Assembly: GCA_964199315.1 (NCBI GenBank)
Contig: OZ116708.1
Coordinates: forward strand, 27,342,001 to 27,406,000
Reading direction: 5' to 3'
Length of the DNA: 64,000 nt
DNA from: Orbicella franksi
Lineage: Eukaryota
The notes beneath the pieces are model-generated. The model was given only the letters and a program-made list of their open reading frames with translations, did not search any database and was not told where the DNA came from. Made by a program: the position numbers and the translations under genes. Positions within the stretch are counted from its first letter, which is position 1. Each line of letters opens with the position of its first letter. This document shows, piece by piece, positions 1,048-63,015 of the stretch.

Positions 1048-1575
1048 ATGACCTCGTATAGATACCTGGCCGCCTCGGATGACAATCTACTCGATCGGAA
1101 TCAAAACATAACCGGACAACCAGACGGAATCAAGATCACCCGACTATATGGCTCCGATGAGGAACAGGACGAAGAGGGATCTTCGGGTTTTCGTGGTCGG
1201 TCCCAGAGCCTAAAGTACTTGAATGAACGAGTGGAGACTGGATCCATATCTAGGTCAAAAAGCCTCAGGGATGTGGACACGGGCGACTTTGACCGCGCCA
1301 CAGCGCGGGTGTCGTATGTTGATAGCTGGAATCCAGTTAATCCCGCTGGACGTGGTAGGTTAGCGACAAAGATTCAAAGCTGGGAGAACTTGGACGCAGA
1401 CGAAGACACTATGTCGCGGAGCGCGGAACATGGTTTCGGACAAAGACGCATCAGTAGCCAGAACTCGGCAAGAAAACGGAGCTATGAAAATTACACAAGG
1501 AGAGCGTCGGCTGAAGATTATTCAAGGAAGACTTCGTCGGGACAGGAGTATGAAGTTATGGATAGGGATTCAGAG
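1048..1575 (+). CDS. Candidate upstream coding exon of filamin (176 codons, low-complexity, Ser/Arg-rich)
   Basis: Open frame from ATG 1048. Pyrimidine tract plus TAG acceptor ends at 1046. Donor GAG|GTAAGC at 1575/1576 is phase 0 and joins in frame to the acceptor at 9362 (VDTR then Met 9374). Confidence 0.72.
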
Positions 1576-4500
1576 GTAAGCCGATAATCAGCCAGTAAGT
1601 GCGCGCGAGTAAATTCGCGTCTGGCTGGCTCCGGGTCAGTAAATATGCAATTTATCAGACGAGTAAACGGTCCGATAAGAAGTCTTTATAGTTGTACCGC
1701 TTTCGCCGACTGGAACTCAGTAATAACTAGTGCTAAGTAATTAGAAAATACATTTAATGAATGTGAACGGGGAAACTGCGGCAAATTGTTGAGTCTGATA
1801 CATTTAGAATATCGGTAATGTTTTGCCGGCTGTTTCGCCCATCGCAGAACCTGCTCAGTAGTCTAAACTGGCATCAAATCTTCCTTTCATTCTAAAGCAC
1901 CAGTTTAATTCACTCGGTCCTCGCTTGTGGTAGACAGGGTACCACAAACCATCCCGGTGGTCGACCATTGACACCCAATTTTGTTAATTTTATGTCTGTA
2001 AGGGACCGGTAATGTATTTAGTACTGCCAAATATATTTCAACATGTGCAAAGAAACTTTAAAAAGTCGGTCATTACTGCATTGAATACCTGCGCTATTTC
2101 AATCAAACTTATGAATCAAAGAAATCTTTGATTTAATTAACGTAGCAACAAATGTTTAAGCTGCAGAGGTGTCTTGGTTTCGTTCCAGTACGCGGATGTG
2201 ACGACAAAAGTTTATCTGTAGAGTAAACATTGTGAAAACTCGCTACCACTGAGAAAAATATCCGCCGTCTTAGTGAATACTGCAGTTGTTAAGGGCAGCG
2301 CGTTATTTGACTTTTTTTCTCAAGTTCCACTTATTGTATTGTAATGCTAATCGTTTAACAAACAAGCAATGCAGAACTTTCCTAAACAAATTCCACAATG
2401 TAATTTGTTTGGGCCGGAGGATTAGAAGATTGCAGTCTTTAATTCCAGACATTTTCCATAGAAAACTTCATAGAAAGGCTCTTCCGCGGACCTGAAACAG
2501 GCCAACCGTGCGAAGCGCAAACTCCCAGATGAGTTCTAGAGATAATTATCCCGTAAGAATATGGCGCGAAAATTGCTTGGCTTCGGGTTTGTTACGCAAC
2601 GACTCTACTCTATTGTTACCTAATTGACGAGCTTGAACTTGACGGTTTTGTTACACCTGTGATTTAACACTTTTTTAACAGTTAGATTTAACGGTTTTAC
2701 CATTCCGTGAAAATTTTGAAGGGGAAACGAAATTTCTCAATTAGCTGCGCTTAGAACTATTCTCACGAGTACCTGATAAACTACAAGTACTTGAGTAATA
2801 TCACTAATCTCTAATTAGCAGTAAGCAGTCGAAACGTCGCGATCTACATCTCAAGTGACTACATCGTGAGACAAACGATAGTACACTTTATTATTGCATC
2901 TACCACGATGAATAACAACAACCTTTTCCTCGACATCACTAATCTTGTACCTAGGCCTCACTCTGTTTGACCGCCTGGCCGTAAGAGATCTGGATTACAC
3001 TAGCTGTTTTCTGCAAATTGTCTGAATGCCGCAGTGTGATTGGGTCAAAGCTTATCTCTGTGATACTCATCAGGGATAGACTTAGACTGTGCACAGCCTC
3101 GCTATTCTTCAACGCACACGAAAGAAAATTAAAAGTAAGCGAAGCGAGCGCGAAGCACACGGGGGTGGTGTCAAACGAAGCATATCACCAGCATAGCAAG
3201 GAGAGCTAGAGAGAGTGCGCATTTTCCATTTTTAGTCTTAAGCGGACGAAAACACTTTTTCTTCTTTGTAGTTTCAAAATCGAGTTGTTGGTTGTTAAAT
3301 TGACACAATTCGGGTTAAATTAGGAAAGAAAAAGTGAAATTTTGTGATGTGAGTGCCTAAGTCTCGTTCGACAAATCGTAGTTACAATGGCACTTCCATC
3401 TGGAACAATTTAACGAGGAACTAAGGAAGGAGGAGACCCACAAGGCGCGTAATTCAGTCTTTTGAATTCTCATTCTGTCTGATATTTTATCCGTGTATAA
3501 AGAGAGTTTATTGACCTCTTTATTGCGGTTATTGTTGTTGTAATTGTTGTTGTTATTGTTGTTGGCAACTGTGAATATTCTCACGGGTGTAACTTCTATG
3601 TCACGAAGTTGCCATCCAGCTGAATACCACCGAATGAGTCCCGTTCCTTTAAGTGTATATTGATATATTGTTCGAAGATTAACGAGCGAAACAAATTAAC
3701 AGAGCACGTATAAAATAGTGGTCACTTTGCGGAGTGCAGAATGAAGTTTCTTGAAGTGGAAAATTGTTCGACCAACGCAAAGCTAGTGTACGGTGACGGC
3801 GTGCAGCTGAGAAATTGAGAGAATACATTGAAATAGAAATTCGCTGTTATAGCTTTATTGTTTCTCGACTCCATCTTGTCGATATTTATCTTTTTTTTTT
3901 ACTAGGACAATATTGACCGTTCATTTGTTTACAGTCGAGTGTGTGGCAGCAATATCTACCTCAAACGAATAGCAGGAATGATTTTCACGATATTTAACCT
4001 GAACTTCCAGAAAAGCGGAGAATATTTAACGACCTTTGAAGTGGCGAGGCAAAAATCCTTTTTTCTCACCGACATTGCGGCTGAATTACAGTTTCAATAT
4101 ATGCCACACCATTTAAAGGAGAGTACACACGAAATTTTGAGTCCGTTGTTTGATCGATGAACAACGTTACTTTCAGAGAGAAAAGAATCTCCTAGAAACT
4201 TCTTCTAAGGCAGTTACTGACACCAAAAAATGATAACAAGAGGGATTTGAAACGACAAACTTGAAAATAACTGGCCAATCGTTAAAAAATCTCTAGGATA
4301 GGAAATCGTCGATTTGTTTATGTTGTCAAATGCAACTCAAGTCTTAACTGATTGGTTGTCACTTACGCGCGAAAATTCACCACCGGCTTTGTAGGTCTAC
4401 GTCATCAGTATGGCGGACTTTTCGGCAGCCTCGTTCCCAGGTTCCTCTCTCTTCCTGGGCTGACTTTTCGGTTCGAATCTCGGACTTGACTCGAGCAGGG

Positions 4501-7500: not shown

Positions 7501-10500
7501 ACTTAAATTTCCATATCTGTTTGATTCCGAGTGTTGAGTGGTAGTTCTGGGTTCGGAAAAAGCAATAATTTTGGCACATTTTTCGCGAATAAAATGGCAT
7601 TATAAATTGGCGATCTGTGACCTTGTCTTCATGTATGGCTGTGAAGTTTCTTAAAAGTTCAAAAAACAGTTTGAAATGCAAAATGAGTACTACGGAAATA
7701 TATCCGGGAAATTTTCTGTCTAATTCTATTGCGTTTGCATTTTAAATGGTTTCGAGTGAGTTCTACGTGCATCTCTTGACCTCAGACCCGGAAATGTAAC
7801 GCTGCCCAGTGTTTTTTGTTAATTCTAATAATAAATAAATATTCAGAAAAAATTCTAAAAATAAATATATATTCGGAAACTTTTTCTTTGCCATTTTCGC
7901 TTTCATATTATATTTGGTGCTTATCAAACGTTCCTTCAAGCAAACAACACAAATGAAATTCGCCATGCCAGTATTGAATAGGACAAAAAACCCCGATTTT
8001 CAAATATCCGGAAAATACGAAGGTATTGCCGTTCTTAAATTAAACCCGGCCTTAAAATAACCAGAAAGTAGCTAAAAAAAATCTTTTCCTTTCACTCATT
8101 CCAGATATAAACACTTGCATGATTGAAATTAGTTTCATTCCACGCAAGGTTTAAAGTTTTCTTAAAAATACAGAGCCGTTTGGAGATTATGCAACGCTCG
8201 CGTGACACCGGTTCAAAGAAAGGCCATTCTTGTCACGCAATACATCTATTTTACTCTGTTACTCTCTGAGGTCACGATATAAAAGCAAAGATAAATATGT
8301 TTTCAATTAACGTTATTCATTATATTTTCTATGACTTGATGATTTCAGTCTAGTTCAAGTCTACGCTGTTTGTGTGGAAAAACTTTTTTAATTTAGCATG
8401 AACGATAGAACAAAAGAGAAATAACGTAAGTGGAAGCTGCAGTTACTAAACGTGACATTTTCATAATATGTTGTCTTGTGTAGAGAAGCTTTCTGTCGAA
8501 ATGACTAAAATGTTCCTTTCTGTGCACAGTAGTTGTTATTTGTGTTTGTTTTGATTTTGCAAAAGATGAAAGAGTTGTCGAGAGGACTGTGTTTTGTAAC
8601 AGTAGCAGTGACCAGTCACGATGTGCCTGTTCATAGACTTTGAATGGCGTTGAGGCAACACAGATAAACAGACCGTGTGTTTGTTGACAAGACTGTTTTT
8701 GTTACAGCAGGGTGAAAATAACACGGGAAAAACGAAGTGAGAAGGCTATGAAATGTTGCCCAGTGATAACAGAAAGTTGGTAAGCCAACTAAGAGCTTAA
8801 TTGCGTGACAACTGTCCCAAACAAAAAACTTTCCCCGAGGATAAATAGGATCATATGGCGCCGGTATTCAATGTTTGTGACACATAACACGCCTTTCCTT
8901 TACGTAGTTTTCCATTGGTTTTCGTGGCATTTTTTCGAGATAAGAATGTCCTATAGGAACGCAGATCCCTAATTTTGCGACATTTTATGAGCGTAGGGCT
9001 TCCTGCGGTGAAGCAGTGCACCGTACAAAAGTACAGGACACTGGTTCTGTACAATTTAAAGCTTATCCTGTGCACGAGAACGGCCGTCTGCAGGGTTCAA
9101 GTCAACAAAAATGGACGTAAGAATCTCACCTTTGATATTTTACTGCGTCTGTCAGCTTATGTATGAAGTATAAACATGAATTATTCAAACAACCTTTGAT
9201 TGGTCGCGCGTAGTGCTACTTAAGACAGCTAGCCTTGCCGTGTCTCTACGTCTAGTGGTCGGTTCAAGGGCGGTTTTTTGCGAAGCTTTCTGGTACATAG
9301 CGACCAGTCGACTTAGCTCCTGTTTGTCCCTTACGGGCTGTCATTTTTCTTGCCACTGTAGGTCGACACGAGAATGCCGGACACAGATCCAACTTCGGCG
9401 GACGCCGAGTGGAAAAAGATTCAACAGAACACCTTCACAAGATGGTGCAACGAGCATCTAAAATGCGTGAACAAGTACATTTACAATTTGGAAACAGACC
9501 TTGTCGACGGATTAAAGCTCATAGCTCTGCTACAAGTCCTTTCGCACAAGAAAATAACGAGATACAACAAGAAGCCTTCGTTTAGACCGCAGAAATTGGA
9601 GAATATTTCTATCGCACTCAAGTTCATCGAAAGCGAGAACATTCGGTTGGTGAATATCGGTGAGTAAAAACCTTGCGTTTGATAATTTTCTCATAACGGC
9701 ACCAAACCACGCTTCGTAATTATATCTCGTAAATAAATGCAGCACTCCATTCCGCGAATTATTATGAAATTTTTATGACCCACCGCTAGTGTTACTTTCG
9801 CTCGTCTGTGTGTAGATTTCTTGCTATTTTTAGTAAGAAGCTTTTCAATCGCTGCTTTAGACAAACATGTTTACCAGAGTCAATATTTCCTAGCCGATAT
9901 TCGTGGTATCTTGTTCAAACTAGAAACAGTGAAGCTGTTAGAAGTTACTTTGGGTGTAAATAGGAGCGAATTCTGCGTTACCTATTGATACTACCATATT
10001 TAGTCATTTGTTCTCCTCAGACATGACTAGCAATGTTTGATTGTGCTGAAATTTGCTGTTGTCTAACCGAGCGTTCTGTATCAGCCGTTTCGTTCATTTG
10101 TTTGTCCGCAGACGTGAGAAGTATTCACCAAGTAATTTAAGATGAAGGATGTTAGGAAGTAAATTTGTTTAAGCTAGTAAATTTGCCAAAGCTTTCTGTC
10201 ATGTTTGATGGGCGTCAACCCAACCCTCTCACGCAAATTTTTCTGTGAACGTAGCAACAATTAGAATTATTATCCGGCTGACGTATGAACTCGAGAATTT
10301 CTCGACTGTTCTGTGTCCAGACTACCCAAAGTTTGTGTTACTGTTCTAAATTGCGTGCCAGATATCGACAAGTTTCCATCTTTTACTCTTGTTCGTGATC
10401 AAGTATTCTTTGTGTGTTCCACACGCTAACCATGGCTTGTTATAATTTTGACTTGAATTCTCCTGCAGTGTACAAATCTAATTAAACTGTCACAAAATAA

Positions 10501-13500: not shown

Positions 13501-16500
13501 TACTTACTTACTTACTCACCCATGCCTGGCAAGCCTCATATATTTAGAGAAATTTTGTTGATCAATGCCATTTTTGTTTTGTTAAAAATTTCATCCTAAT
13601 TGAACTTGAGTAAGAGTTTATACTAACAAAGAATACTTATGCTGTATCATGACACCTAATTTAAAATATGAATTATAAATGACCCCTTGCACTCTTTTGC
13701 TCAAACATTGTAATCCATTTTTTATGTTAAGCCCCTAAATATCTGAATTTAACTTTTGTTTTGACAACTGGTTCACATTATCAAAAAAAAAAAAAAAAAA
13801 AAACTTAAGAAAAAGAAGAAAAAGCTCAATGCAGGTTAAAGGAAATTACTGGTATATATGTCATGGTTGAAGGCTATAAGTGTATGATGTTTACATCATC
13901 TGTTGTCCAACTATATGCAAATTGAGCAAACAAATGGCATTTATTCATGATTAATAATACCTTATATTATTGCCCTTTGCTTCTCATAAAATCATAAAAA
14001 AGAATAGAACACATTGGTCTGACATAATTAAAAGACCAATCTTTGCTGCCAGTGGGAATAATTCTTCAGCATCCAAACAACTAGAACTAATCTGGTATGA
14101 TCAACAAGATAATTGCTTGAATTAATTGTGATGTTGAGACCTTTAATGTGAAGCTGGAGGGCATGAATCTCCAGACAATAAGCCCCCCAATCTAGTTAAG
14201 GACAGGACATAGTTTTCATTCCATTGTATCTAAGAGCTGTTTTAATTATCTGCACTCTCAGCTACAAGTAAGACAACTTGCCAAAGAACTGATAAAAATA
14301 TTGTTGCATGATAATATTCTCTGTAAGACAGCAGTCTCTTTTTGAAACCAAAGTGACCTCTATGGTGAAGTTATATTATGCCCTTGACTATTCAGACGTG
14401 ATGGTATTTATGTAATTATGACCTGAAATAATTACACCTAGTGTTATTCTCTGGAATTAAAAAATTTGCATATGAGTTTCAATTAAGTATATTTTATGAT
14501 ATTTACTCTGGAATAATGCCTGGGAGGATGTAATAAAAACCACGTGTCAAATACATTAGGCATTGCCAGACGTGATGGTATTTTTATGACATAACAGAGA
14601 AGATTATATTTGCTTAAGTATAACACTTAGTTTGATTAGGGAAAATTATTTTTTCTATTAAATTTTTTAAAACGTAAGATGATTATTTTTTTAAGATAGA
14701 AAGAACCTTGTTCAGGTTGTGATGAATATAACAGACTGGTACAAAATGTGTAACAATGTGAATGCATGTTGAATAGTACTTCAAGTGATATTGCATGATC
14801 TGTATACCAGCTGAAAATGCTTTTGTCTATGTTGACTAGCTTTCAACAGTGCTGACTGTCTTTTATTAGTATTGCCACTGACTTACTCTACGTTGCAAAA
14901 CAAAATGAAGCAAAATGGAACAGTATAAAATGAAATGAAACAAACCAAGACAAGTGACAAAAAGATATATATTGAGTGCTATGGTCAGAAATCTTCTGAA
15001 AGAGGAGTAAAAACAATGGAAAATTGTGTAAAGTTTACTCCAAACTTCAAAATCTATATTGTGAAAAAGTGAGCCAAGAGATGAAAAAACCCTCTTGCTT
15101 TGCAAATGACAGATTCTTAAAAATCTCTATTTTGTGGAGTGATGCTTACAGGCCCATTTCGAATTGAAACTTTATTCTCTGTACTCTGCACTTTTTTGCA
15201 ACATCAGTTGGAAGATTTGTTTCAGATTTTACACTGGCAATATAGCTGATCTCAATGATGCTGATATTATTTATATGGTTTTAAATGCTTCTTTATCATT
15301 GCTAGATGCTAGTGACATCTTCAAGGGAAATATTAAATTGATCCTGGGTCTGATATGGACATTGATTCTGAAGTACCAGATCAGCATGCCATATCTTGAT
15401 GATGACGATGATGAAGGACAGAAGATGACGCCTAAACAAGCACTTCTGGCATGGGTGAAAAGCAAGATGCCAGAGTCTGTTCCAATGGATAATTTCAACA
15501 GAGACTGGAATGATGGACGAGCTGTAGCTTGCCTGGTGGATGCTGTTGCTCCTGGCCTCTTCCCAGAGTGTGAGGATCTGGACCCTGCCGATAGACTTGA
15601 AAATGCAAGACAAGCAATGCAAGCTGCTGAAGACTGGCTTGGTGTTCCTCAGGTAGTCATTTTACAGTCTCGGGGAGGGAATGGGTTGGATTATATTGTA
15701 TGAGTGAGTGTGAGTGACACTGCAGCAGAAAAGCTTATTGCACTGGTATGTTGAATAAAAGTGGTGGCAGTCAAAGATTTCTAGTGTGCATTTGATGCAA
15801 TCAATGAGAAAATTGGATATCTATAAGTATGCAAGAAAAATTACCCCCAAAAGAGCAGAAAGATTGAAGTGAAGTGCACAGAGATGAAATTTTAAGATTT
15901 CTTTCTGTGGTAACTGTAGATTCAGTGTGGCATGTAGGATATCAAGTGGCAGTTATTTTACATATCAAGATTTTCTTGAAAACTTAGAATAGTACAAAGG
16001 TTGCATATAGAGCAAACCCATAGCACTAAATGGATTTTGATAAAGTTATATTAGACCTTAGTTAACAAGGCTAGAGCATGCTTTTAGTGGGTTTGTTGAC
16101 TAAAGTGGGTTGACTAAAGTGGGTAGTATAGGGGTTGAATTGCCTAAAGCTTGATTCAAAGTAAGGTAAACAGTGCAAGAGAGATGTTAAGACTCTCCAG
16201 GGCCAAATTTTTGGAATATCAAGGTTATAATTATATCATTTTAAAAATTTTAAAGTATACTGATGCTCTTCTACATAACTGATATACTTAATTTTCTTAC
16301 AATCTTACAGGTTATCACTCCAGAAGAAATCACTAATCCTAACGTTGATGAACTGAGTGTCATGACATATGTCTCCTACTTTCCTGAGGCAAAACTGAAA
16401 CCCGGTGCTCCCCTGCGCCCAAGGACCCACCCCTCGGCAAAGTGTTCTGCCAAAGGACCCGGTGTGGAACCAAAAGGCCTTGTTGTCAAGAAGCCAGCCG

Positions 16501-19500
16501 ATTTTACTGTGCTCACTCAAGGTGCTGGAATGGGAAAGTTGAGTGTTTCTGTCTGGGGACCTGGAAAGTCAGAAGAGGAAGTAATTGTACGGGACAATCA
16601 AGATCATACCTTTGCATGTCAATACTTTCCACAGAAACAAGGTAATTTAAATATCTCTTTGCCCTTTCACCACTGGATAGCCCTTATGTGCTTGTGACAT
16701 CACTGTTTGGCTCAAATCTGGCCGATTTTGATGAAGGCATTAAATTGTGGCACCCCCACCCCCACCCCCCCCCCCCCCCATACATGATGTAGATGGACTG
16801 GGACAAAGTTCAAGGCACGAAAACACAACACTCCTTAGTTAATTGTACATGGGCAAGGCTGACAGTAACCAGCTTAGCTTTGACAAGCTTTGACAACACA
16901 TCCTGTCAACTCTCTGACTGGTTTTGACCAGTTCCAAAACTAAGGAGTTAATAGTTAAGGAGATTTAACATTTTAAGTTTACAGGTAATCTGTAGCATGA
17001 TTTTCTGTATCAGGAAAATATGATGTGCATGTAAAATGGAATGGGAGACATATCCCCAAGAGTCCATTCCGAGTGGAAGTTGGTCAAGATCTTGATGCCA
17101 GTCAGGCTTACGCCACAGGACCTGGATTGCAGCCTGAAGGAATCCAAGCCGGCAAGTACACAGACTTCACTGTGTTCACAAAAGGTGCTGGAGAAGGACA
17201 AGTGTCTGTCAAAGTTATTGATCCACGTGGTGGAGAAGATGTGGACATTATTATCGAACCACAGGAAGATGGGCAGTATTTTGTTGAATACCAGCCTGTT
17301 AACGCTGGAAAACACACCATCAAGGTGTTGTTTGGAGGACAACCAATTAGTAAGAGCCCCTTCCATGTCATGGTGAGCCCACCACGAATTGAACCCATCC
17401 CATCAAAAGTGCGAGTGTTTGGTCAAGGTAAGCAATCTTAAAGTGTCTATCTCGGTATTCTCTGGTAATGAGCTCCAAGCACACTTTTGACCTCTTGAAC
17501 ATTTTGTTTTTGCAGCCAAATAACTATTAATGAAACCTGTCTTCAGTGGCCATCTCTGCTAAGTTCCAGATAGGCTTTAATGAAAGAAAGGTTACCCATA
17601 TCAATAGGGGCTAAGTTTCAACAGGTCTATGGTTTAGAGGCTTACCAAATTGCAAGAAGTTTTCATTAATTTGTCACATTAGATCTAGCTGACTCTGTAG
17701 GGGTTTTGACCAGAGGCCCTTCCCTAAACTTCTGACTGTTCACCTATGAGGTTTTATTTTGTTTTATATGATTATGATTTGTTGGTTTGTTAAAAGTGAA
17801 AAGTAATGCTGTAGGCTTGAGACACCCATTGAAACTTCCTCTGTGTCTGTTTGTATGACTTTTGCCATACCACAAAAAGTATCTTTCGAAATTATGGACA
17901 AGTATACTTTATGTGGTCTTTGGATCTATAGTTAAAACCTGGTTTTTCCCTGGGTTAATTGATAATGACAAAAGCCGTACTTACATGCATGTATGTTTGT
18001 TAATAATGTTACAGGTGTCGAGCCAACTGGTTTAAAGGCTGGACAGCGAGCACCATTTACAGTTGATGCCAAGGGTGCAGGTGATGGTGAACTGGATGTG
18101 TTTGTGGAGGGCCCTCAAGGAGAAGAAAAAGTTGACATCAAGAACAACGGCGATGGGACATATTCATGTATCTACTATCCTGGGAAATTTGGAAAGTATG
18201 TTGTCAATGTGACATGGAGTTCAGTTCAGGTTCCAAACAGTCCTTTCAATGTCAAAGTTGCTCCAGCTGTTGATGCAAGTAGAATCAAAGCTTATGGACC
18301 TGGTTTGGAGAGAGGTGAAGGTTTTTCCTGTTTTGTTAGACAGGTTTTATTGTCAAGCACTGATTTCTGAGTTTTTGCTTTGGCACATGAGCAAGTTTAG
18401 GAATGATTTGTGGAGGCAGGGGCCACTGTTTTTTTTCTTACATTACTTTCTTGCGAATGAAAATATGGTCAAACCTGTATTAAGCAGCCACCTATTAAGT
18501 GGCTAGTTATCAAAGTCCCAAAATTATTGTCTCTAAAATATTTCAAATGAAACCCGTATTAAACAGCCACGGTCACCTTTTGGTTGTTCAGATGAAGGTT
18601 TTTTGTCTTTAACCCTATGAAACGGCCATGGTCCAAAATTAAATACACATAATTTAGCTTTGTTTTGGAAAAGGTAATGACAGACAAGAGTCAAAAATAG
18701 AAGGTGATGAGTGATAAAAACATTCAAACACTTTATCATGATTGCCTTGGAAGTGATTCCATGTTCACTAAGAAATTAACTAGGTGGTAAAAAGTATTCA
18801 AGTTACACCAACCCCTATTAAGGCACCTCTCATTTTTCCTGAGGGTGGCCACTTAATAGGGGTTCACTTGTACTACTTTTAAAAGCTAAAATTGGTGTTG
18901 AAGCAGTGTTCTGTTCAGGCTAAGATAAGTCATGTATAGATGTCTCACAGTGCTTGTACCCTTTTAACTCTTACCTCACAGGTACTGCAGGCAAGCCATG
19001 TGAGTTCACAGTGGAAACCAAAGGAGCAGGAATTGACAGTCTAGGATTTGCCATTGAAGGGCCATCTCAGGCAGAAATTCACTGTCAAGAGCGGTCACCA
19101 GGCATCTGTGATGTGCATTACTACCCAACTACACCAGGAAATTATGCTATTCATGTCACATGTGGGGATGAAGACATTCCCAAGAGTCCCTTTATGGTGC
19201 CAATATCACCTGCAGGAGATGCCAAGAAAGTGTACGCTGAAGGACCTGGTTTACAGCCTGAGGGTGTTGTAGCAGGTAAAGCTCTTTTCAGTTAGGCAAG
19301 TTTTCAGAGTGTAATGGGACCAGTCCTTTAATATGTTCTCCATGTGTACTTTGATGTTTACTACTTTGTTGATTTGGGCAGTTCCATTTTTTATCCACAC
19401 CCCCATGTTGAGGGTCAAGGAAATCTGAAAGGGTGGGGTAGGTCTTTAAAGGCAGTTTCTGAGGGAGCAACTGTGTCGGTACCTTCGATCTTTTATGTAC

Positions 19501-30994: not shown

Positions 30995-31406
30995 ACACGC
31001 GAGAACACGCGCGTGCGCGAAACGAGAACTCTAGTCTTGTAATTAAGGACTTAAAAAAATTGAAGGAGAAATTATTTTCATTACAACTGTAAGGTTGCAC
31101 CTGAATGTTTTAAGTCGCATTTTGCAATACTAATGCTAGTTTTCTATTCTATTACAATTAAAATTTTGTTAAAAAACCCCTCGTTTGTATCACTGACTGT
31201 AGAAACTTTAGGATCTATTGTAGCTAGTGAAGCATTTTTCGGCGATACAAGTTGTAGCTATGTTGTAATTTCTAAATCGATCATCGTATTATGATAAACG
31301 CGGTAACACGTAGAAGAAAGAGCACTGTAAACTCAAATGTTTTGTTTGTTAGTTTTTCTAGCGAGATCTGTGTGATAATTTTAGGGATATTTTCTAATAA
31401 CTGACA

Positions 31407-31412
31407 AATAAA
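31407..31412 (+). terminator. Probable filamin polyadenylation signal AATAAA
   Basis: AATAAA about 410 nt after the stop codon, followed by a U/GU-rich stretch and then repeat sequence. Confidence 0.5.
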
Positions 31413-31476
31413 TTGGTTAAAGAAATTTTGTATTTTTATTGGTTACCTCTTAAAAGGCATTTCAGTGGTGCACTTT

Positions 31477-31530
31477 TCCCCGGGGGACTCCCATGAGTAA
31501 AGGTCGGAATAGGCCGTATTCGTATTCTCG

Positions 31531-31563
<33 letters not shown>

Positions 31564-32329: not shown

Positions 32330-32420
32330 GTTTTGGATTTATCACGTGACTGTTTAGACCACTCGCATGTTATTCAGGAACCCGCAATGATTGGAATTAG
32401 CGTCCGCGCTCACCGATTAG
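32330..32420 (+). promoter_or_regulatory. Probable CADPS promoter region
   Basis: ATCACGTGAC E-box (32341-32350) and reverse CCAAT (GATTGG near 32390) in a CpG-rich context 500-600 nt upstream of the ATG. Confidence 0.4.
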
Positions 32421-32927
32421 TGCCGTTTTTTTTAGTAAGCGTCCCTCAACTAAAAAGCGTCTCCTTCCAATAACCTTACTTAACTGAGATAAAATAAAAA
32501 CAAGTTTTTGCTGTGTAGCACTTTGAATAGAATAGCATTCGTTTAAAATAACAAAAAGTGGTTATATGTGGTATTTTTAGATACCTTTCTGTAAAAACAG
32601 ACGTCCACGTTTGTTTAACGTTTCATTTACGACTGATGAAGAGGGTTTTCCCGAAACGTCTCCGAGATAAAATAGACCGACTGGACGAATGAACGTAATA
32701 TGAGCAATATGACGGGATGGGCCGAGATGGGTTCCTGTTCCGCGGGACTCTTCTGCAACCTAACGGTACTGCCGAAGTACCGGTCCAGCGGTTGCTCCTA
32801 TGAGAGTGAAAAGAGCAGTCATTTGACCATTCATTAGTCGCCCGATGTTTACTTGTTACTTCAGCAGACGTGTTCAATACACGTTCATATCGAGAGGACT
32901 GCGGAGGTTTGAACCTTCACTAGCACA

Positions 32928-41900: not shown

Positions 41901-44900
41901 GTTTCATCCTTTGCTTCCATTGGTCCTGAAAATGGGGGAGTGGTCAATTAAGATAATTATATAATTATAATTTTTTTTATTATGTTGTTGATATCAGATA
42001 ATCTTATTTTGTGGTTTCATCAGAGATAAGTTGACAGCAGATAGCCAGTGTGTGCTGTAGTGTATTCTGAAGATTTTCTTTCTCTGAAACATGGCTCTGA
42101 GTTTGTAAAAGTCGTCTAAAATTTTGTGGAGCTAAAAGCACATGTCTGAAGAAAAATAGTTGTAAAAACAGTAGAAGTCACATTTCTATGCCAGTTTATC
42201 TCATTATGCGGCAGCTCTTTACTCCACCCATTCAAACTTTTGATCTTGTTGTAAATGGGTAACGACAGCAGTTGGTGGAATCTGATAGAACACTAGCCAA
42301 GGGCTATTCTGCATCCCATCCAGGGGAAGTAACAATACTACTATTTGTTTCATGCCATGGAAGTCAGGATGAGCTCTTTCTAACAATGTCAAGGGTCACT
42401 TAAGCATTCTCAGGTTATTAGAATATGCAGTAAAAGGATGGTGCATGTTTGTTTTGTTTGTCCAATTATCCTTCGTCCATAGGTGATAATAAAACCGACA
42501 CCCGGAGGATCAGAGCTGCCTGAGCTGTATGATGTTGTGACACCCAAAGGCTGGACTGGTGATAAAGTTAAATTAAAAATTGCCGTCAAGATGGATAAAC
42601 CTGTGAACCTAAAGAAATGTGGGTTAGTGGGTTGACATTAGGCCTTTCCTTATTGAATTGTCTCTACATCTTTATGATATATCTCTTCATTTCCTCTTTT
42701 TTTCAGGATACTTGTTACCCTTTCAGTTCTGAGCTGTGTGGGTCCGCAGACTATTTGATAATGTTATGACAAAATTCATTGTCAATAACAGGACAGACAT
42801 ATGAGACACTGATGTCATTTTGTTAAACATGTAATTTGGAATGACAATTAGCATGATTACATGTAGCAATCCTCCACCTCTTTTTGAGCCAGTTTTTTAA
42901 TTTCATTCTTAGATTGATTTATGTTCAAGGGAAGAGTGTGTGGAAAAAGTGGAAAACACGCTTCTTTGCACTTGTGCAGGTGTGTAATACCATGGCTTCA
43001 TGAGAACATAAATTCCCATATTTCCACCTCTGGCAGTTCAGTCAATGAGACAAATGTTTTTACATAATAAGCAATATGACACTGGTCTCCCTAAGTACAG
43101 CAGCCTATTGCTTGGTGCATTTGACCATGGAAACCAGGTGATTCTCTTTGTGTTATGTTCTTAGGCAGGACCTGTAATTCACTCTTGAGTGTATTTTCTG
43201 ATTCTCCACCCAAAAGTTACAACTCTGCACTGTACATGTAGTTTTTCATTCACATCCTGAAATCCGTTATTAACTAAAGCAATAGCCTGACAACCAGTCA
43301 GTGTGCTTGGATACAGGATTTTGTTATAACAAATTGTACTTTACTCACTTGCTGTAGGTGAGTAATTATACGTTTGCCATGTGCAGTTACCGTGAGAAGC
43401 AGGCCGAGCCCACAGAAATGATGCAGCTGGATGGTTATACTGTGGATTACTGTGAGGCTGTCGGTGGTAGGTCACTAACATAACAAATCAGTAATTAAGG
43501 ATGTTAATGCTTAGTGGTCGCTGCATGATTTCTAATATGGAACAAAGAGGATAAAGTAAGCCTGTGATGAGGTCAGGTGTCAAGGACCATTTCTATGGAC
43601 AACCTCCACTAGGTATGGTTAGTTTAAGACAGTTTTTCTTCAGCTATGAGCCACCTTTGAAACCCAACAGGCAGCTGTCTGAGTGAAACAATGGTGAAAA
43701 GGAGGAAAGGGGAATAAAGAAAATGAAGAATTTCTGGCAAAATAGATCAGCATCGTCCATGAACTGCAGCCTCTTTCCCCTCTGTTAAAGACACTACAGG
43801 GGAACCCTGTTAATACGACCACCTTCGGGCCGAGGAAAATTGGTCATATTAACGGGGTGGTCATATTAAAGGGGTTCTTAAAATAGGAAAATGACTGACT
43901 GAGCTTTTTTTTGGATCAGAACAAAGTGGCCGTAATAACGAGGCGGTTGTATTAATAGGATGGTCATAAGGTGGGGTTCCACTGTTTTCAAATTCAGCGA
44001 TGCCTATGTTTTAGCATGCTTGAAAATGCTGTCGTCAATAACTGGTAGCACTTATAACACCTGCCCATTGTTGTTGACCTTTAGGATTGAATGAATTGCA
44101 CAAAACTGTTTGTTAGTAATTTAAGTGATGCTTTACCAACTGCATTCCTTGATATCAATTTGTGATTTATTTTAATCTGTAGATGAAGAACACAAAGGTG
44201 GAAGGTTTTTCTTCAAAGCTGTGAAGGAGGGTGATCAAGTCTTGTTTGCAACAGAAGAGGAACTCGAGAGACAGATCTGGGTGAACAAACTGTACACTGC
44301 TACTGGCCAGTCACACAAGCCTGTTGCACCAAACCTGTCAGCCGTCAGTGTCCAGCCGCATGTTAATAACACACTGACAAGACTTCAAGGAGGTCAGTTG
44401 TTTGCCGGTCTTTAATTGAAGATTTAAAATTGTAATGAAAACTGTATTAAGACCCAGTACCCTCCTTGTCCTTGTAAATGGCCCTGTCCCACAGTCATTC
44501 TTTGAAAGATCAAGGTTTGAGTTCTCCAGACTACCCCTACTCCTACCAAGAATGTTACCTAATACATTTTAAAAGATGAAAGACCTACCATAAGGTACGT
44601 AATTTGCCTACTTTATGTAAGATGAAATCTGGATCAGGCAATAAATGTCTTTTACTGTCTGAGCTTCAAATCATGGTTTTTGTAGCATGAAGTCATACTA
44701 GGAGTAATCCTACTCCCCATTCCTGGATGGAATGCTAGTCCATCACAGGGTTACCCTCAGTATAGTGGCTAACCATTAATAGGCAACTCTGTGTAAAATC
44801 CCCATTGGAAGACCCTGACAAGCCCAGAGGGGTGAGGCAGTTATTTTGTTAAGATTATGATTGCATTGCCTTCTGTTTTAAATACTGCTCAGTTCTGAGC

Positions 44901-47900
44901 TACATGTATTTTTGTCTTTGTTGTTTATTTGCGTGTTTAGACCATGACCGTGCCAGGAAACATGGACTTGAGGATTTAATTCAAGCTGATCCAAACACAT
45001 TCAACCACCATGTTCTATTTGAGAAGCTGCAGCACCTGACTCTGACACACAGGCTAAATGACTCGTATTCTTGTTTGGTATGAACATTATTTTATACTTT
45101 TTTGTTTTAAATTGGGTGATTCAAGAAAAATATCCATACCCTACCACAGGCAGCCTGAACATTCCCCCACCTTTGCCTTTGGAAATACCAAAATGCTCCA
45201 CCCCATGTCCTCTGAATTCCAAAATCATTAATGTCCTCCCCTCCGGATTTCCGTTTTTTTTACTACAACTATCTGGAATTCCTCGTTTGACTCTCCACAC
45301 TTTTACATCTTCCCAGATGTTTTTGCTAATATTTTTCAGTCAAACAATTGTCTACAGGGCTTGAAATTGCGACTGAAATGGTCACATGCATTTGGGGACC
45401 AAACTTCCTCTTCAGTCGCAATTTTTGCAACTACTGGTAGTTTTTGACTAAACTAGTGAAGAAAGAAAAATTGCAGTTGCTTTGTGTGGCATGCATGCTT
45501 TTATGTTACAGACCTCTGAATGGTAAGCAGATGATTAAACATGGACTGTACACTGCTAAATGATAGCACAATTTTAATGATGGAATCAAAACTTGTCTGT
45601 CTTCAGGGCTGGTTCTCTCCAGGTCAGGTATTTGTTTTAGATGAGTATTGTGCGCGATATGGAGTACGTGGCTGTCACCGTCAATTAAGTTATCTCAGTG
45701 ACTTGCTAGACAGGGCGGAGGCCGGTGTTATGATTGACCCAACCTTGCTACATTACAGCTTTGCATTTTGTGCATCACATGTGCATGGAAACAGGTTTGT
45801 GTCTAATTTTCCATTCTTTACCCCCCCCCCCTAAGTTTCTGCCAATCATTCCTATGTCAGTCACCCCACTGTCAATCATTCTTATGTCAGTCACCCCACT
45901 GACAGTCATTCCTATGTCAGTTACCCCACTGTCAATCATTTGTATGTCAGTCACCCCACTGTCAATCATTTTTATGCCAGTTACCCCACTGTCAATCATT
46001 CGTATGTCAATCACCCCACTGTCAATCATTTTTATGTCAGTCACCCCACTGTCAATCATTCTTGTGTCAGTCACCCCACTGGCGATCATTCCTATTTCAG
46101 TTACCCCACTGTCAATCATTCTCGTGTCAGTCACTACACCGTCAGTCTTCCCACAGTCAATCAGCTTAGTGTTGGTTTGAGACATTATTGATTGCGTTTT
46201 TCATTATACCACTGTTAATTACTACAGGCCAGATGGCTTAGGAACCATCACAGTTGATGAGAAAACCTGGTTTGAGGAGATCAAGATACGACTCTGGAAT
46301 CTTCTTGCCTATCAAATCACTCGCTTCAGGTAGACTAATATCATATTCTACAATTTTTTATCTTTTAACTGGTCCACCTCCAAGGTAAAACTGGGGATAA
46401 AGTGTAAATCCAGCGATAGGTCTCACATCAATAATATTGGTCTAAAAGAATAGATAAACAGTTTGTGGTTTATTTAGATGTTCTTGAGCTGATGAATATA
46501 ATTTCTGTACTTTTTTGTAGATATTCGTTTCCCTTTGGAAGACCTGAAGGTGCCCTGAAAGCAACAATTGCTCTATTTGAGAGGGTGAGCCTTGTAATTT
46601 TTACTTTATTAACTGTATATCTATGTTGGAATCCTCTTATTCCTTAACTCAGTTTTTGAAAGATTAGAACAAAGCTTATGGTGTTGTATTATGGTGCAGG
46701 TCCAAGCTGCAAGCTTTGACTTCCACTGTGAACAGTATGAATCTGTAAACAACTTTCAATTTAACAAGTAGATTAGGAGCTTGAAATTTCTAGTATTGCG
46801 TGTAGGTGGCAATGCTTGGCGGTGCTTTTGTACAAATGTTTAAAATTATTTATTATGGAAACATACTAGGCTTCTATAATATTGGAGGTGTGGTATGCTG
46901 TGTGTGTTAGACTTTGGATGATGAGGTCTTATCAGGGATGTGTACTTTTTAATTGCTGTAATTTTTTTAACTGGCCTGGTTATCTTGTTGTCATTTTCAG
47001 GTTATGATGAAAGATATATCCACACCAGTCCCACCGGAGGAATTCAGAAAAGAAATGAGAAGTTGCCTCCATCAGGCTGCTCTTGTCAATTATACACGGG
47101 TCTCAACTTTTGCAAAGATTGAAGGTGATTCTCAAAATATCCTGAAATTAATTGCAGCTGATTTGAGTTAACAGGCAATTTCTTAGTCCTGTCGCACTTA
47201 TCAGCTCATAGGAAAGAAACCATTTCATGAGTTAACCCTTTGCCTCTTTGCACTAACAAGCCCTAACTCTCAAAACGTCAGTTTTACCAACTAAGTGGCA
47301 GATTAATTTATCCTGGCTTATTAACTTCAGCTTCATAGGTAAATATTTACTTCAGGTAAATAGCCAAGTGTTTTGTGTTTGAGTTATGTACAAAATTACC
47401 TTTACATTGAAGGAAACCTAAAAATAATAGTTCACTAAGATAAAAAAAAAAAACACGAAAGAGATAGTAATAAACAATAAAAGAACAAAGATGTTTAGGG
47501 ATGGAGGAGATTAACACATATTACAAACAAAAAACTTAAAAAATTTAGGCTAGATTTTTCAAGATGCGAAACCGCGATGTAGCTCCTTATCAGTTGATTT
47601 CTTAGTCCTGTTAAACTTATCAGCTTATTAGGAAAGAAGACATTGTGTACATTAGCCCTTTGTCTCTGCTCTGACAAGGCCTAACATTTGAAACGTCAGT
47701 TTTACCAACAAACTACAGTGCCAGTGTAATTTACCCTTATCAACTTCATGTTAATAAATAGCTAAGTGTTTCTCATCTGCTTGTAAACACAGCACAACAG
47801 TTTCTTTGGAAACTAATAACTTTGCCCTTAAGGAGGAAAATTCCATGTATGTGGAGGGTCTGTAGCTTGTAACCTTCACGAAGGGGTGCCGTTCATTTGA

Positions 47901-59351: not shown

Positions 59352-62300
59352 ATGGGAGAAGCTTATCACCGACCAGACCAGAAAACGCTCCAAGCTTTGA
59401 AAGATATGGCTAGCAAGCTTCGAATTCATAGCATCGAATCCACGAATACGGCTGGCTCTGGGTAAATGCATTGAAATATGAAATTCAGATTGACTGAACA
59501 AATACTGTAGGCTTCACTTTGAGCCAGTTTTTTCACTCGATTTTTTCTTTGCAGACATCCAACTTCATGCTGCTCTATTGCGGAAATAATGTCGGTTCTG
59601 TTTTTCCACACAATGCGCTATAAAGGTGAGTTGCAAAGACGTTTCGCAATCAGCTGAAAGTCTCGTAAATTTGCACGGCAGTGTTACATATCTCAGAGTC
59701 TCGTCTCGATATTGCTACATTGTTGAACACATTTTCAAGCCGTGATAATGTGCATCAGCTATAACTTCGGCTGAAAGCTGTATTATAGTAATAATACAGA
59801 AAAAGTCACGTTTAATATGTTTGTTTATTCACACTATAAGCTCATGTTGGTGCGGAGTTTCAATGTGCGTGAGTATTTTGCACAGTCATTGTAGTGGAAA
59901 GAGGAATTTTAAACTCTTGAATATTTTGATCTCAGCCTTTGTTTCGGCCGATTTCAAATTTTCCGTCTTTAACTATTTAAAGGTACTGTGCTCGTCAAAA
60001 ATTAATTGCTCAATCAATTGTTTAGAGTTTCAATCGAGGTAATGATAAAGAAAAAAATATTAAACTGTGTGCTTAGACTGAATACCTGCTTGAATTTTAA
60101 GCAGAGTATTTGAAATTTTAAGTTTACATGTAAGCTGAATAGTAAAACATGTAGTTATGAGAACACTTAAAGTATAGTTTAAATTTAGTTATATTTGTTG
60201 ACTGAGTACAGCAAAAATAAAAATTCCAGAATGTACTATCCAGTAGTCATGACAACATTTAAAACTGTTGGGATTTTAGTGATGAGTGATGTAAAATGTG
60301 AGCTAAACTTATAATAAGGAATGTTATTCTCCTTACTTTAATCAGAGGAACAATGACTTACAACAACAACAAAAGTTTAAAACACTGATTGGCAGTTCAT
60401 TTCAGTCTATAAATTGTTAGGTGCAACAGGAAAATCAGTGTTACTTGCCAAATGGATTAATGTCATATCCTTGCAAATACAATTAAATGAAGATGTGGCA
60501 GCCAGTAGAACAAACAAAAGAAGCTAACTAGAAAGTGCTATTTACATCCACCAACTTGGAGGTGATGATACCACACTGGAAACTAAACGTTAAATACCTT
60601 GGATGACATTTTGTGGTGGGTGGTTGATAGGGGTTTTATTTACAATATTTTGCTGACAGTAAATTTGGGACTTTGATAACTGGCCGCTTAATAAGGAGTG
60701 GCTGCTTAATAGGCGGTCGCTTAATAGAGGTTCAACTGTATCAATGTATTTGCAAAGTTGGCCACATAAATTTCTTTTCTTTGAAATATTTTAAAGAAGA
60801 GGGATTTCTGTCATCAACTTTTGTCAAAAAAACAGGGAATGCAATGAAATGAGTAGTAACAATAATAAATAACAATAAATAGTCTTCATTGGTTTGTGCA
60901 AGTTGTTAACTTTGACCTCTCTACTTAAATTTTGTTAAATATCAAATGGAACCAACCAAGAGGCTGTGCAGATGAAGCTGCAAAAAGCTATCTAATCATT
61001 TGTGAAAGTGGCAACCATCTGTATGCATATGGCATGTGTTACTCAAAATATTGTGCTAAATTTATACTGCACTTTTAAGGTAGTACTTGGCAATCACTTC
61101 ATTAAGTGATGTTAGGATAGAAACTTGCTCACTTGATTTGAAGATAAATGATGGCTCCATTTTATTTCCTATAATTGACAAATTCTATAAAGTACACCTA
61201 AAAGAGCATAAAAACCGTTTGCCAATATTTATATTACATGTAGTAACTTTGAGCTGTTGTGCATGAGGAACTGATTACGTGTTGAATATTCATTTTAAAA
61301 ACAAGTAGTTTAGAGAGCCATTGTTGTTTGAATCCACTTAAGTCATGCAATCTTTGGGCCTGTTTATTTAGAAGTGTGGTGGCCTTCCTTTACGAATTTT
61401 CCTTGTAGAAGGGCTAAATGGCATAGCTCCTTGTAATTTTACTGTTCAGAGTTAAAAACGAGTAATTGATAACTAATTACTGAAGCATGTCAACGTGTAG
61501 AGAAACAATAGAGTTATATCTACATTATACATGTTTATTTTGCCTCATCAAGAGAGGTTGTTTACCCGAGTGTAAATACTGTGGAACCCCGTTAATCTGG
61601 TCACCAACGGGCCACAAAAATCTGTCTGTAAAGGGGAAAATGACTGACTGAGCTTTTTTTGGGCCAGAATAAAGTGGCCGTAATAATGAGGTGACCGTAT
61701 TATCGGGTTGGTCGTAGGGCAGGGTTTCACTGTAATATTGTCAATTTCCAGTTTCACCATACATTCTGGTGTGAGATCATCAGTAGGTTAGGATTAATTT
61801 CATTCAATATGTTTTGATAATGATGAGATGCCTTTTTTTCAGTGTCCAATCCAAGGGATGCTTCAAGTGACAGATTCATCTTGTCAAAGGTGGGTAGATG
61901 ATTCTGTTGAACTTTATCACACCTCATTCTGTGACCAACTAAACAATTGCATATTATACCCTCCTTAAGCTTTGAGATATATCAATAAAATATGAACACA
62001 TTCAAGTACATTCTAATCATGAACTAATGGTATGACCCTCTTTGCACGTAGTGGAACTCCATCAATTTAACAGTGAGAGTGGTTATGTAAGCTAAATAAT
62101 GTACTAGATAGAGTGATGGATAATCTTGTGGCCTCTTTACCATCAACTCCTGGATAGCTAGTCAACCCTTCAGTACATTACAGGATGCCCATAATCAACA
62201 AGATCATTGTCAGCTAGAACGTAAAAATATGCTAGGGTGCTTGTTAACAGTTATCGTTCTGCAATATTATCTCCAGGGACATGCGGCTCCAATTCTGTAT

Positions 62301-63015
62301 GCAGTGTGGGCAGAGGCTGGTTTGTTTCCAGTGGAGGACCTGGCCAAACTTCGCACAATTGACTCTGATTTGGAGGGTCACCCAACTCCTGTGAGTGCCT
62401 TTTATTTGTTTTGTTGTGGGTAACTTAATAGTCATAGACGGAACAATTTTTCTTGACAATTTTGTTCAAGAGGGGAAAGGTGTAATGAGGTTAACCCTAT
62501 ATGATCGTTGTAGTAATAACCCTTTGATGTTACAGTGTTAGTTTTCCTTTGTCATTTCCAAAACTATTCACAGAGATACCAACTCAAAAAAATCGCAAAG
62601 TAGGAGATTATTGATTTTGCTTCTTCTTCACCCCCAAATAACGTAGGACGTAATTGAGTTTTGCTGATTCAACCACATAAATAACAGGGTCAAATATCCC
62701 TTAAAATGTCCGAAAATCGGCCAAAATAAGTGTGAAAATATGTACTTTAAACCCCACCATTCATATTCAAAGATTCACTGACCCATACTGGTCTGTATTT
62801 GGTGACTCCCAGATAATTTGGGAGAGTTGCCATAGGTGTATTCATTATGCACCATAGAATTACGAAAAATAAACTAAGGTTCTTTGAAATGTCAAGTATT
62901 CTGCTTTTTTTCTATAGCGTCTAAGCTTCGTTGACTTTGCAACTGGTTCGCTTGGACAAGGCTTGAGCTGCTCTGCCGGCATGGCTTACGCTGGCAAGTA
63001 CTTCGACAAAGCAAG
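59352..63015 (+). CDS. TKT: Transketolase, 5' part (first 5 coding exons; gene continues beyond the window)
   Basis: Exons: 59352-59461, 59555-59625, 61843-61889, 62277-62390, 62918-63015. Translation: [60 protein letters not shown]...[22 protein letters not shown]...[40 protein letters not shown], the animal-type TKT N-terminus. Confidence 0.95.

What the first reader, a model, noticed from the sequence alone, without database searches (positions are those of the whole stretch)
1048..63015. Filamin-CADPS-transketolase cluster echoes the human 3p / 7q / Xq28 paralogous regions
Seen: FLN, CADPS and TKT are consecutive and co-oriented, with spacers of only about 1.9 kb and 4.1 kb between coding regions. 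Established (recalled): human TKTL1 lies next to FLNA at Xq28; FLNB (3p14.3), CADPS (3p14.2) and TKT (3p21.1) share 3p; FLNC (7q32) and CADPS2 (7q31) share 7q. Inference: this may be the ancestral eumetazoan arrangement, a microsynteny older than the cnidarian-bilaterian split, perhaps held by shared regulation.
Basis: partly seen in the sequence, partly recalled or inferred. Interest (0 to 1): 0.7.

Follow-up and report, generated by a model that had tools for sequence, protein, structure and literature searches.

The report
Coral filamin–CADPS–transketolase gene trio
Three ordinary genes (filamin, the vesicle-priming factor CADPS and transketolase) do lie head-to-tail within about 67 kb of a coral chromosome and stay together in other stony corals, but the limited checks possible outside stony corals found no such cluster, so an ancient animal-wide arrangement remains an open idea.

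Summary
All three genes are on the + strand with nothing recognisable between them.

- **Filamin:** candidate start 1048, canonical start 9374, stop 30994.
- **CADPS:** 32928-55230.
- **Transketolase (TKT):** starts at 59352 and runs past the window to about 68209.
- **Assembly gap (53624-53938):** harmless. RNA-seq reads splice 53477 to 54333 across it, and the flanking exons are in frame and consecutive against homologues.
- **Copy number:** CADPS and TKT are single-copy in this genome.

**Conservation in stony-coral-like assemblies.** Filamin sits 1.85-3.7 kb upstream of CADPS in three other assemblies. In one of them TKT lies downstream on the same strand of the same contig.

**Outside that group, no support.**
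- Four more distant cnidarian-like assemblies show no filamin within 5-10 kb upstream of CADPS.
- The annotated oyster Pinctada has SET-domain and C2-domain genes flanking CADPS.
- Priapulus and a compact unidentified animal also lack the cluster.

**Human echo.** It is largely what a shared ancestral linkage group plus vertebrate genome duplication predicts. Filamin is a published member of that set of duplicated regions. Only the FLNA-TKTL1 adjacency hints at older tight linkage.

**Verdict.** A real stony-coral cluster. Ancestral eumetazoan microsynteny is possible (about 0.3) but unproven, and there is no evidence for shared regulation.

The parts
1048..1575 (+). Candidate first coding exon of filamin: 176 codons, serine-rich, no known domain.
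   Evidence: The ORF is open over 1018-1584. It ends at a GAG|GTAAGC donor in phase 0, which joins in frame to the exon starting at 9362. It has no Pfam hit and is single-copy in the genome. The splice was not verified by RNA.
9362..9664 (+). Filamin exon carrying the canonical N-terminus (ATG at 9374) and most of CH1.
   Evidence: A pyrimidine tract plus TAG acceptor lies at 9359-9361. The translation reads '[28 protein letters not shown]...'. Pfam CH, E 2e-14.
15305..15650 (+). Filamin exon with the end of CH1 and most of CH2. Its edges are approximate.
   Evidence: Translation; Pfam CH, E 9e-18.
16254..30994 (+). Filamin immunoglobulin-repeat rod, in many exons, up to the stop codon. It includes single exons of 713 aa (26221-28359) and 514 aa (29450-30991).
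   Evidence: Pfam Filamin repeats in every large ORF, E down to 6.5e-107. The C-terminus reads '...[11 protein letters not shown]'.
30995..32927 (.). Spacer between the filamin stop and the CADPS start, 1933 bp. It must hold the filamin 3'UTR and the CADPS promoter.
   Evidence: Coordinates. The homologous spacers are 1.85 kb in L022, 3.3 kb in L009 and 3.7 kb in L003.
32928..55230 (+). CADPS (CAPS/UNC-31) coding region, at least 26 exons.
   Evidence: tblastn with Pinctada, Tubulanus and Ixodes CADPS maps collinear exons. Pfam C2_CAPS at 41548 and MUN at 51333. RNA junctions define the 3' exons 50367-50504, 51327-51482, 52187-52296, 52570-52612, 53157-53232, 53393-53477, 54333-54439, 54586-54691 and 55002 onward. 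Single-copy in the genome.
53624..53938 (.). Assembly gap (N run), lying inside the CADPS intron 53478-54332.
   Evidence: A GT..AG junction from 53477 to 54333 is seen in 12, 12 and 2 reads of three RNA runs. The flanking exons are phase 0/0, '...FSLR|NPGTELEE...', and consecutive against P0257 and P0267.
55231..56200 (+). CADPS 3'UTR. The far end given here is a minimum.
   Evidence: RNA depth of 10-18 continues to the end of the laid stretch at 56200.
59352..63015 (+). The first five coding exons of transketolase. The gene continues outside the window to about position 68209 (L001:4206 plus the stop codon).
   Evidence: Translations. Collinear Transketolase_N, Transket_pyr and Transketolase_C hits. 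Human transketolase structures match at E 5e-46. Single-copy in the genome.

Best explanation
The window holds three unrelated, separately transcribed, ordinary genes arranged head-to-tail:
- a canonical filamin (two CH domains, a long immunoglobulin-repeat rod and a C-terminal dimerisation repeat);
- the single CADPS/UNC-31 dense-core-vesicle priming factor;
- the single animal-type transketolase.

The tight arrangement is a real microsynteny shared by stony corals. The resemblance to human 3p, 7q and Xq28 arises mainly because the three families sat on one ancestral linkage group, which the vertebrate genome duplications copied into paralogous regions. Direct adjacency is not retained in the bilaterian invertebrates I could examine. 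It was also not seen in the more distant cnidarian-like assemblies.

On current evidence, therefore, the close packing is most simply a neutral, lineage-retained or lineage-acquired neighbourhood in a compact part of the coral genome, not a cluster held by function.

- **Shown:** gene identities, order, spacers, gap continuity, and conservation within stony-coral-like assemblies.
- **Inferred:** the linkage-group explanation and the absence of any functional constraint.
For: **Gene identities and coordinates:**

**Transcripts:** CADPS has its own spliced transcript, with a 3'UTR of at least 1 kb.

**Conservation in coral-like assemblies:**
- Filamin's last exons lie 1.85-3.7 kb upstream of CADPS exon 1 on the same strand in L022 (98% identity), L009 (88%) and L003 (80%).
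- In the 88% species the TKT exon lies 79,077 bp downstream of CADPS exon 1 on the same strand of the same 1.38 Mb contig.

**No cluster elsewhere:**
- Pinctada CADPS is flanked by a SET-domain gene and a C2-domain gene, with no filamin or TKT by tblastn.
- Priapulus has nothing within 10 kb.
- A compact unidentified metazoan has neither filamin in the 10 kb upstream nor TKT in the roughly 5.5 kb downstream.
- Four cnidarian-like assemblies have no filamin within 5-10 kb upstream of CADPS.

**Linkage-group background:**
- FLN is a listed member of the vertebrate opsin paralogon (PMC3826523).
- C. elegans unc-31 sits on a 17,493,829-bp record, which from memory is the length of chromosome IV. 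From memory, fln-1 and tkt-1 are also on IV.
Against: **Points favouring older tight linkage:**
- Human TKTL1 lies directly beside the FLNA-EMD segment (PMC9271157).
- From memory, the retained paralogues lie within about 5-10 Mb of each other on 3p and 7q.
- By rough estimate, the FLNA-TKTL1 adjacency is unlikely (about 1-5%) even given a shared linkage group.

**Weaknesses of my negatives:**
- Flanks were at most 10 kb.
- The non-coral assemblies are unnamed.
- Molluscs and ecdysozoans often scramble gene order.
- Nematostella, Hydra, amphioxus, echinoderms, Trichoplax and sponges were not tested.

**A complication for the simple picture:** the one plexin locus found in this genome is on contig C9, not C11. 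The coral chromosome therefore does not simply equal the whole vertebrate paralogon.
Confidence: 0.6

Rival explanations
1. FLN-CADPS-TKT is an ancestral eumetazoan microsyntenic block. Corals keep it intact. In vertebrates it was quadruplicated, and FLNA-TKTL1 at Xq28 is the remnant left after loss of the CADPS copy. Other lineages broke it.
For: - The cluster is tight and conserved in order and orientation across stony-coral assemblies.
- TKTL1 lies next to the FLNA-EMD segment in human.
- TKTL1 is described as a product of vertebrate genome duplication (PMC4235042).
- FLN is in the paralogon.
- All three families have members on 3p, and two of them on 7q (recalled from memory).
Against: - No adjacency in Pinctada, Priapulus or a compact metazoan.
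- None detected in four more distant cnidarian-like assemblies within 5-10 kb.
- From memory, human TKTL1 and FLNA are convergent rather than tandem, and the FLNA-EMD segment inverts recurrently.
- None of the three genes appears in the main text of the systematic microsynteny survey (PMC3514665). Its supplementary lists were not available.
Confidence: 0.3
2. The cluster is kept together by function, through shared enhancers, read-through transcription or a regulatory block. One candidate regulatory block would serve the two POU homeobox genes about 20 kb downstream.
For: - The spacers are very short: 1.9 kb, and less than 3.2 kb once the CADPS 3'UTR is subtracted.
- Two tandem POU-homeobox genes lie about 12-15 kb beyond the TKT stop, roughly 20-23 kb past the window's end.
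Against: - The three genes have unrelated roles, and none is a developmental regulator.
- The head-to-tail layout gives no shared promoter.
- The CADPS-to-TKT distance more than doubles in another coral, 79 kb against 33 kb. That argues against tight spacing constraints.
- No regulatory data were available.
Confidence: 0.07
3. The juxtaposition is an assembly artefact, a misjoin at the N gap.
For: An N run of estimated length lies at 53624-53938, between most of CADPS and TKT.
Against: - RNA reads splice across the gap within CADPS.
- A spliced transcript from a relative has the same exon order (L032).
- An independent assembly has filamin, CADPS and TKT on one contig in the same order.
Confidence: 0.02

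Closest known systems
Vertebrate 2R paralogon carrying the visual opsins, L1CAM, PLXNA and FLN families (human chromosomes 1, 3, 7, 12 and X; Lagman et al. 2013, PMC3826523)
   Same: FLNA, FLNB and FLNC are listed members. From memory, CADPS/CADPS2 and TKT/TKTL1 lie in the same human regions.
   Different: CADPS and TKT are not mentioned in that paper's main text. The coral's only detected plexin locus is on another contig, C9. The coral chromosome is therefore not a one-to-one image of the paralogon.
Ancient metazoan microsyntenic pairs (Irimia et al. 2012, PMC3514665)
   Same: It is the same kind of claim: unrelated neighbouring genes kept adjacent across phyla.
   Different: Those pairs are defined by adjacency in several phyla, and many involve a developmental regulator with enhancers in a bystander gene. 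Here adjacency is shown only within stony corals, and none of the three genes appears in that paper's main text.
Human Xq28 segment TEX28-TKTL1-[FLNA-EMD]-RPL10 (PMC9271157)
   Same: A transketolase-family gene lies next to a filamin gene.
   Different: There is no CADPS between them. From memory their orientation is convergent, and the FLNA-EMD block is flanked by inverted repeats that invert it recurrently.

Membership tests
Filamin (FLN) | N-terminal tandem calponin-homology actin-binding domains | tested here: met
   Pfam CH in 9374-9664 (E 2e-14) and in the 15164-15700 ORF (E 9e-18). The translation shows the end of CH1 followed by CH2.
Filamin (FLN) | Long array of filamin/ABP280 immunoglobulin repeats ending in a C-terminal dimerisation repeat | tested here: met
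   PF00630 hits in all large exons from 16254 to 30991. The C-terminal motif reads '...[11 protein letters not shown]'. Dimerisation itself was not tested.
CADPS / CAPS / UNC-31 | CAPS-type C2 domain, PH domain and MUN (Munc13-homology) domain, in that order, after a conserved N-terminal region | tested here: met
   PF25341 at 41548 and PF06292 at 51333. The PH region was matched only through collinear tblastn to annotated CADPS proteins, not by Pfam on the exons themselves. The N-terminal exon's named homologues are all annotated 'calcium-dependent secretion activator'.
Transketolase (animal type) | Thiamine-diphosphate-binding N domain, pyrimidine-binding domain and C-terminal domain, collinear in one protein of about 620 aa | tested here: met
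   Exon-by-exon Pfam hits fall at profile positions 62-99, 107-131, 147-186 and 207-246 of PF00456, followed by PF02779 and PF02780. Human TKT structures match residues 313-421 at E 5e-46. A whole-genome search with PF00456 found nothing because the exons are short.
Ancient (cnidarian-bilaterian) microsyntenic block | Orthologues adjacent in several non-scleractinian cnidarians | tested here: inconclusive
   No filamin within 5.2-10 kb upstream of CADPS exon 1 in four cnidarian-like assemblies. The flanks are short and the taxa unnamed.
Ancient (cnidarian-bilaterian) microsyntenic block | Orthologues adjacent in invertebrate bilaterians | tested here: not met
   Pinctada imbricata CADPS has SET-domain and C2-domain genes as neighbours. 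Priapulus has none within 10 kb. A compact unidentified metazoan has none.
Ancient (cnidarian-bilaterian) microsyntenic block | Adjacency, or its traces, in vertebrates | tested here: inconclusive
   Gene orders in the literature place TKTL1 beside FLNA-EMD. The 3p and 7q positions are recalled, not tested. No human sequence was used.
Ancient (cnidarian-bilaterian) microsyntenic block | Listed in published microsynteny catalogues | not testable with these tools
   The main text of PMC3514665 lacks all three genes, and its supplementary tables are not held.

The most novel reading that the evidence does not exclude
FLN-CADPS-TKT is a genuine pre-bilaterian microsyntenic block. Stony corals preserve it intact, and the FLNA-TKTL1 adjacency at human Xq28 is its last vertebrate trace, left after loss of the CADPS duplicate. 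That would add a non-developmental, three-gene example to the short list of microsyntenies older than the cnidarian-bilaterian split.
Probability: 0.3. Interest if true: 0.5.

Novelty: new member of a known kind. Interest (0 to 1): 0.3.

Why it matters
If the trio proved ancestral, it would be an unusually clean marker for reconstructing the pre-duplication vertebrate chromosome that gave rise to 3p, 7q and Xq28. It would also be a test case for whether microsynteny can persist for more than 600 million years without a developmental regulator. As it stands, the result is mainly a verified annotation of three single-copy housekeeping or neuronal genes in a coral. It also shows that an assembly gap does not disturb them, and that resemblance to human paralogous regions is expected from conserved linkage groups.

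Tried and rejected
**Searches that returned nothing useful:**
- Scanning large ORFs of the TKT and CADPS regions with Pfam missed almost everything, because the exons are short.
- A whole-genome search with PF00456 found nothing, for the same reason.
- The representative search with CADPS exon 1 returned mostly fragments. The one full-length hit used was a nematode protein, so the first homologue search listed only ecdysozoans and two lophotrochozoans.
- Four literature searches combining the three genes with synteny terms gave nothing relevant. So did two CADPS-centred synteny searches.

**Attempts that failed technically:**
- A mixed alignment of window exons with two full-length CADPS proteins was badly misaligned by MAFFT. 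It was not used as a profile.
- The Tubulanus CADPS protein was not on record for a context look-up.
- Three context look-ups returned gene tables but no DNA.

**Tests that were uninformative:**
- The TKT-side look-up in one coral showed a partial plus a full tandem TKT copy and no CADPS within 10 kb, which says nothing either way.
- Matching contig lengths between the TKT-exon and CADPS-exon clusters found one shared contig, in a coral, and none among bilaterian-like assemblies. This is weak, because the assemblies sampled may differ.
- A macrosynteny test with paralogon families gave one locus on another contig (plexin on C9) and one blank (VGCC_alpha2), so I stopped it.

**Rejected reading:** an assembly misjoin at the gap is ruled out.
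Full report
**What the window is.** It is G000:C11:27342001-27406000, about 1.45 Mb from the end of a 28.9 Mb contig of a 497 Mb genome. Public runs that hold the sequence are labelled coral metagenome or coral-like organisms. An earlier scan note on nearby DNA also calls it a reef coral.

**Filamin.**
- The exon at 9362-9664 encodes '[28 protein letters not shown]...' and hits the CH domain.
- The exon at about 15305-15650 carries the end of CH1 and CH2.
- Every large + strand ORF from 16254 to 30991 is made of filamin repeats. These include single exons of 713 and 514 residues.
- The protein ends '...[11 protein letters not shown]' with the stop at 30992-30994.
That ORF has no domain hit and is single-copy.
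- It ends at a good donor (GAG|GTAAGC, 1575/1576) in phase 0. The 9362 exon begins just after a pyrimidine tract and an AG in phase 0, so the two join in frame.
- I regard 1048-1575 as a likely but unproven first coding exon. The conservative start is the ATG at 9374.

**CADPS.**
- The first exon (ATG at 32928) is 60-68% identical to nemertean and oyster CADPS. Its named relatives are all 'calcium-dependent secretion activator'.
- tblastn with three full-length CADPS proteins maps about 25 collinear exons down to 54716.
- Pfam places C2_CAPS at 41548 and MUN at 51333.
- The last exon runs from 55002 to the stop at 55228-55230.

**Transketolase.**
- Exon 1 begins at 59352 ('[18 protein letters not shown]...'). 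Four more exons follow, up to 63015.
- The other seven exons lie in the 4.2 kb beyond the window.
- Exon-wise Pfam hits are collinear through all three transketolase domains.
- The best solved structures are human transketolase.
- The window therefore holds only the first fifth or so of TKT.
- Spacers between coding regions are 1933 bp and 4121 bp. No domain-bearing ORF lies in them or on the opposite strand.

**The assembly gap.**
- The N run at 53624-53938 lies between a CADPS exon ending at 53477 and one starting at 54333.
- The first exon ends '...FSLR' after a complete codon, followed by GTATGT.
- The second begins 'NPGTELEE...' right after a CAG acceptor.
- The two align to consecutive residues of oyster and nemertean CADPS with nothing missing.
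- PolyA RNA-seq raw reads from three runs show the junction 53477 to 54333 directly, in 12, 12 and 2 reads. They also show all neighbouring junctions.
- Those reads reveal two tiny exons (52570-52612 and 53157-53232) that homology had missed.
- A spliced transcript contig from a related coral shows the same exon order (L032).
- The gap is intronic, and the flanks are continuous in the transcript and in frame.
- RNA depth continues at least 1 kb past the CADPS stop. The true intergenic space before TKT is therefore under 3.2 kb.
- The reads differ from the window at fixed positions, so they come from a close relative or another genotype.

**Copy number.** The CADPS first exon and a TKT exon each occur once in the genome. 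A second, distant filamin-repeat gene lies on contig C7.

**Other corals.** Exon-sized gene calls on anonymous public assemblies let me look around CADPS exon 1.
- A tree of these exons places the window with three close relatives (96%, 88% and 80% identity). These sit inside a well-supported cnidarian-like clade of 13-15 sequences, apart from named molluscs, a nemertean, arthropods, echinoderm-like sequences and vertebrates. This is a quick tree only.
- Filamin's last two large exons sit upstream on the same strand in the 98%, 88% and 80% relatives. The spacers are 1.85, 3.3 and 3.7 kb.
- In the 88% relative, the TKT exon is on the same 1,376,586-bp contig and the same strand, 79,077 bp downstream of CADPS exon 1. 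In the window that distance is 32.7 kb.
- Order and orientation are therefore conserved among these corals, while distances are not.

**Further out.**
- A 69% relative shows no filamin in the 5.2 kb available upstream.
- An assembly with a tandem duplicate of CADPS exon 1 has three long minus-strand ORFs without domains in the 10 kb upstream.
- Two long-branch cnidarian-like assemblies show retrotransposon ORFs or nothing.
- In the annotated oyster Pinctada imbricata, the 56 kb CADPS gene is flanked by a SET-domain gene upstream and a C2-domain gene downstream. tblastn finds no filamin or TKT in the 76 kb locus.
- Priapulus shows nothing within 10 kb.
- A very compact, AT-rich, unidentified metazoan contig has a 5 kb CADPS gene, with neither filamin in the 10 kb upstream nor TKT in the roughly 5.5 kb downstream.
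- These negatives are limited by the 10 kb flanks and by unnamed taxa. The oyster and the compact genome are real counter-examples to direct adjacency.

**The human echo.**
- Filamin is a listed member of the vertebrate paralogon that also carries the visual opsins, L1CAM and plexin-A families (PMC3826523).
- Published Xq28 maps give the order TEX28, TKTL1, then the recurrently invertible FLNA-EMD segment, then RPL10 (PMC9271157).
- One paper describes TKTL1 as a product of vertebrate genome duplication (PMC4235042).
- The 3p and 7q positions are from memory.
- For any three neighbouring coral genes on a conserved linkage group, the human co-orthologues are expected to fall in the same set of paralogous regions. 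Most of the echo is therefore macrosynteny.
- The exception is FLNA-TKTL1. By rough estimate, adjacency is only about 1-5% likely even given a shared region. That keeps the ancestral-cluster idea alive.
- Against a simple picture, the only plexin locus found here is on another contig.
- C. elegans unc-31 is on a 17,493,829-bp record, which from memory is the length of chromosome IV. From memory, fln-1 and tkt-1 are on IV too. That fits linkage-group conservation without adjacency.

**Known or new.**
- None of the three genes appears in the main text of the systematic microsynteny survey, and its tables were not available.
- Six literature searches combining these genes with synteny terms found nothing.
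- The cluster itself is not a described system. It is a candidate addition to a known kind of phenomenon.

**Verdict.**
There is a stony-coral microsynteny on an anciently shared linkage group.
- An ancestral eumetazoan block has a probability of about 0.3.
- Functional or regulatory constraint is unsupported.
- Interest is modest.

Noticed in passing
window 51830-51875: A short element inside a CADPS intron has RNA depth 10-50 times that of the neighbouring exons. It also has dozens of different loose ends on both sides and strand-switching joints. This looks like a dispersed, transcribed repeat, possibly a MITE-like element.
   Followed up: no
L017:220-777 and L017:2910-3503 (G000:C11:27426220-27429503): Two tandem single-exon POU-plus-homeodomain genes lie about 12-15 kb beyond the TKT stop, roughly 20-23 kb past the window's end. 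By eye their POU-specific domains resemble class III POU genes. A rhodopsin-type GPCR follows at L017:7517-8554.
   Followed up: partly
L018:9131-9955 (-) and L020:528-863 (-): Further downstream lies an ORF whose N-terminus looks like FAM120 by eye, with no Pfam hit. An RCC1-repeat exon follows.
   Followed up: no
Unnamed assembly ERZ26695794 (loci, no DNA held): CADPS exon 1 is present twice in tandem, 5.5 kb apart. The products are 273 and 278 aa (P0295 and P0301, separate branches of one clade in the tree). These could be alternative first exons or a local duplication.
   Followed up: no
L006:10031-20342: In a coral relative (TKT exon 83% identical), the last four TKT exons are followed 2.2 kb later by the first exons of another TKT copy. 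This is a partial tandem duplication. The window's own genome has a single TKT.
   Followed up: partly
L043:19389-20071: In a compact unidentified metazoan contig, a MARVEL/synaptophysin-like ORF lies about 4 kb downstream of CADPS. From memory, this recalls human SYNPR beside CADPS at 3p14.2.
   Followed up: no
G000:C7:15611778-15621212: A second filamin-repeat gene, 30-41% identical to the window's filamin, lies on another contig.
   Followed up: no
L011:3518-4420 (-) and L002:4229-4773 (-): The 20 kb upstream of the window holds reverse-transcriptase-like ORFs and no obvious conserved gene. The filamin 5' flank is therefore gene-poor.
   Followed up: no
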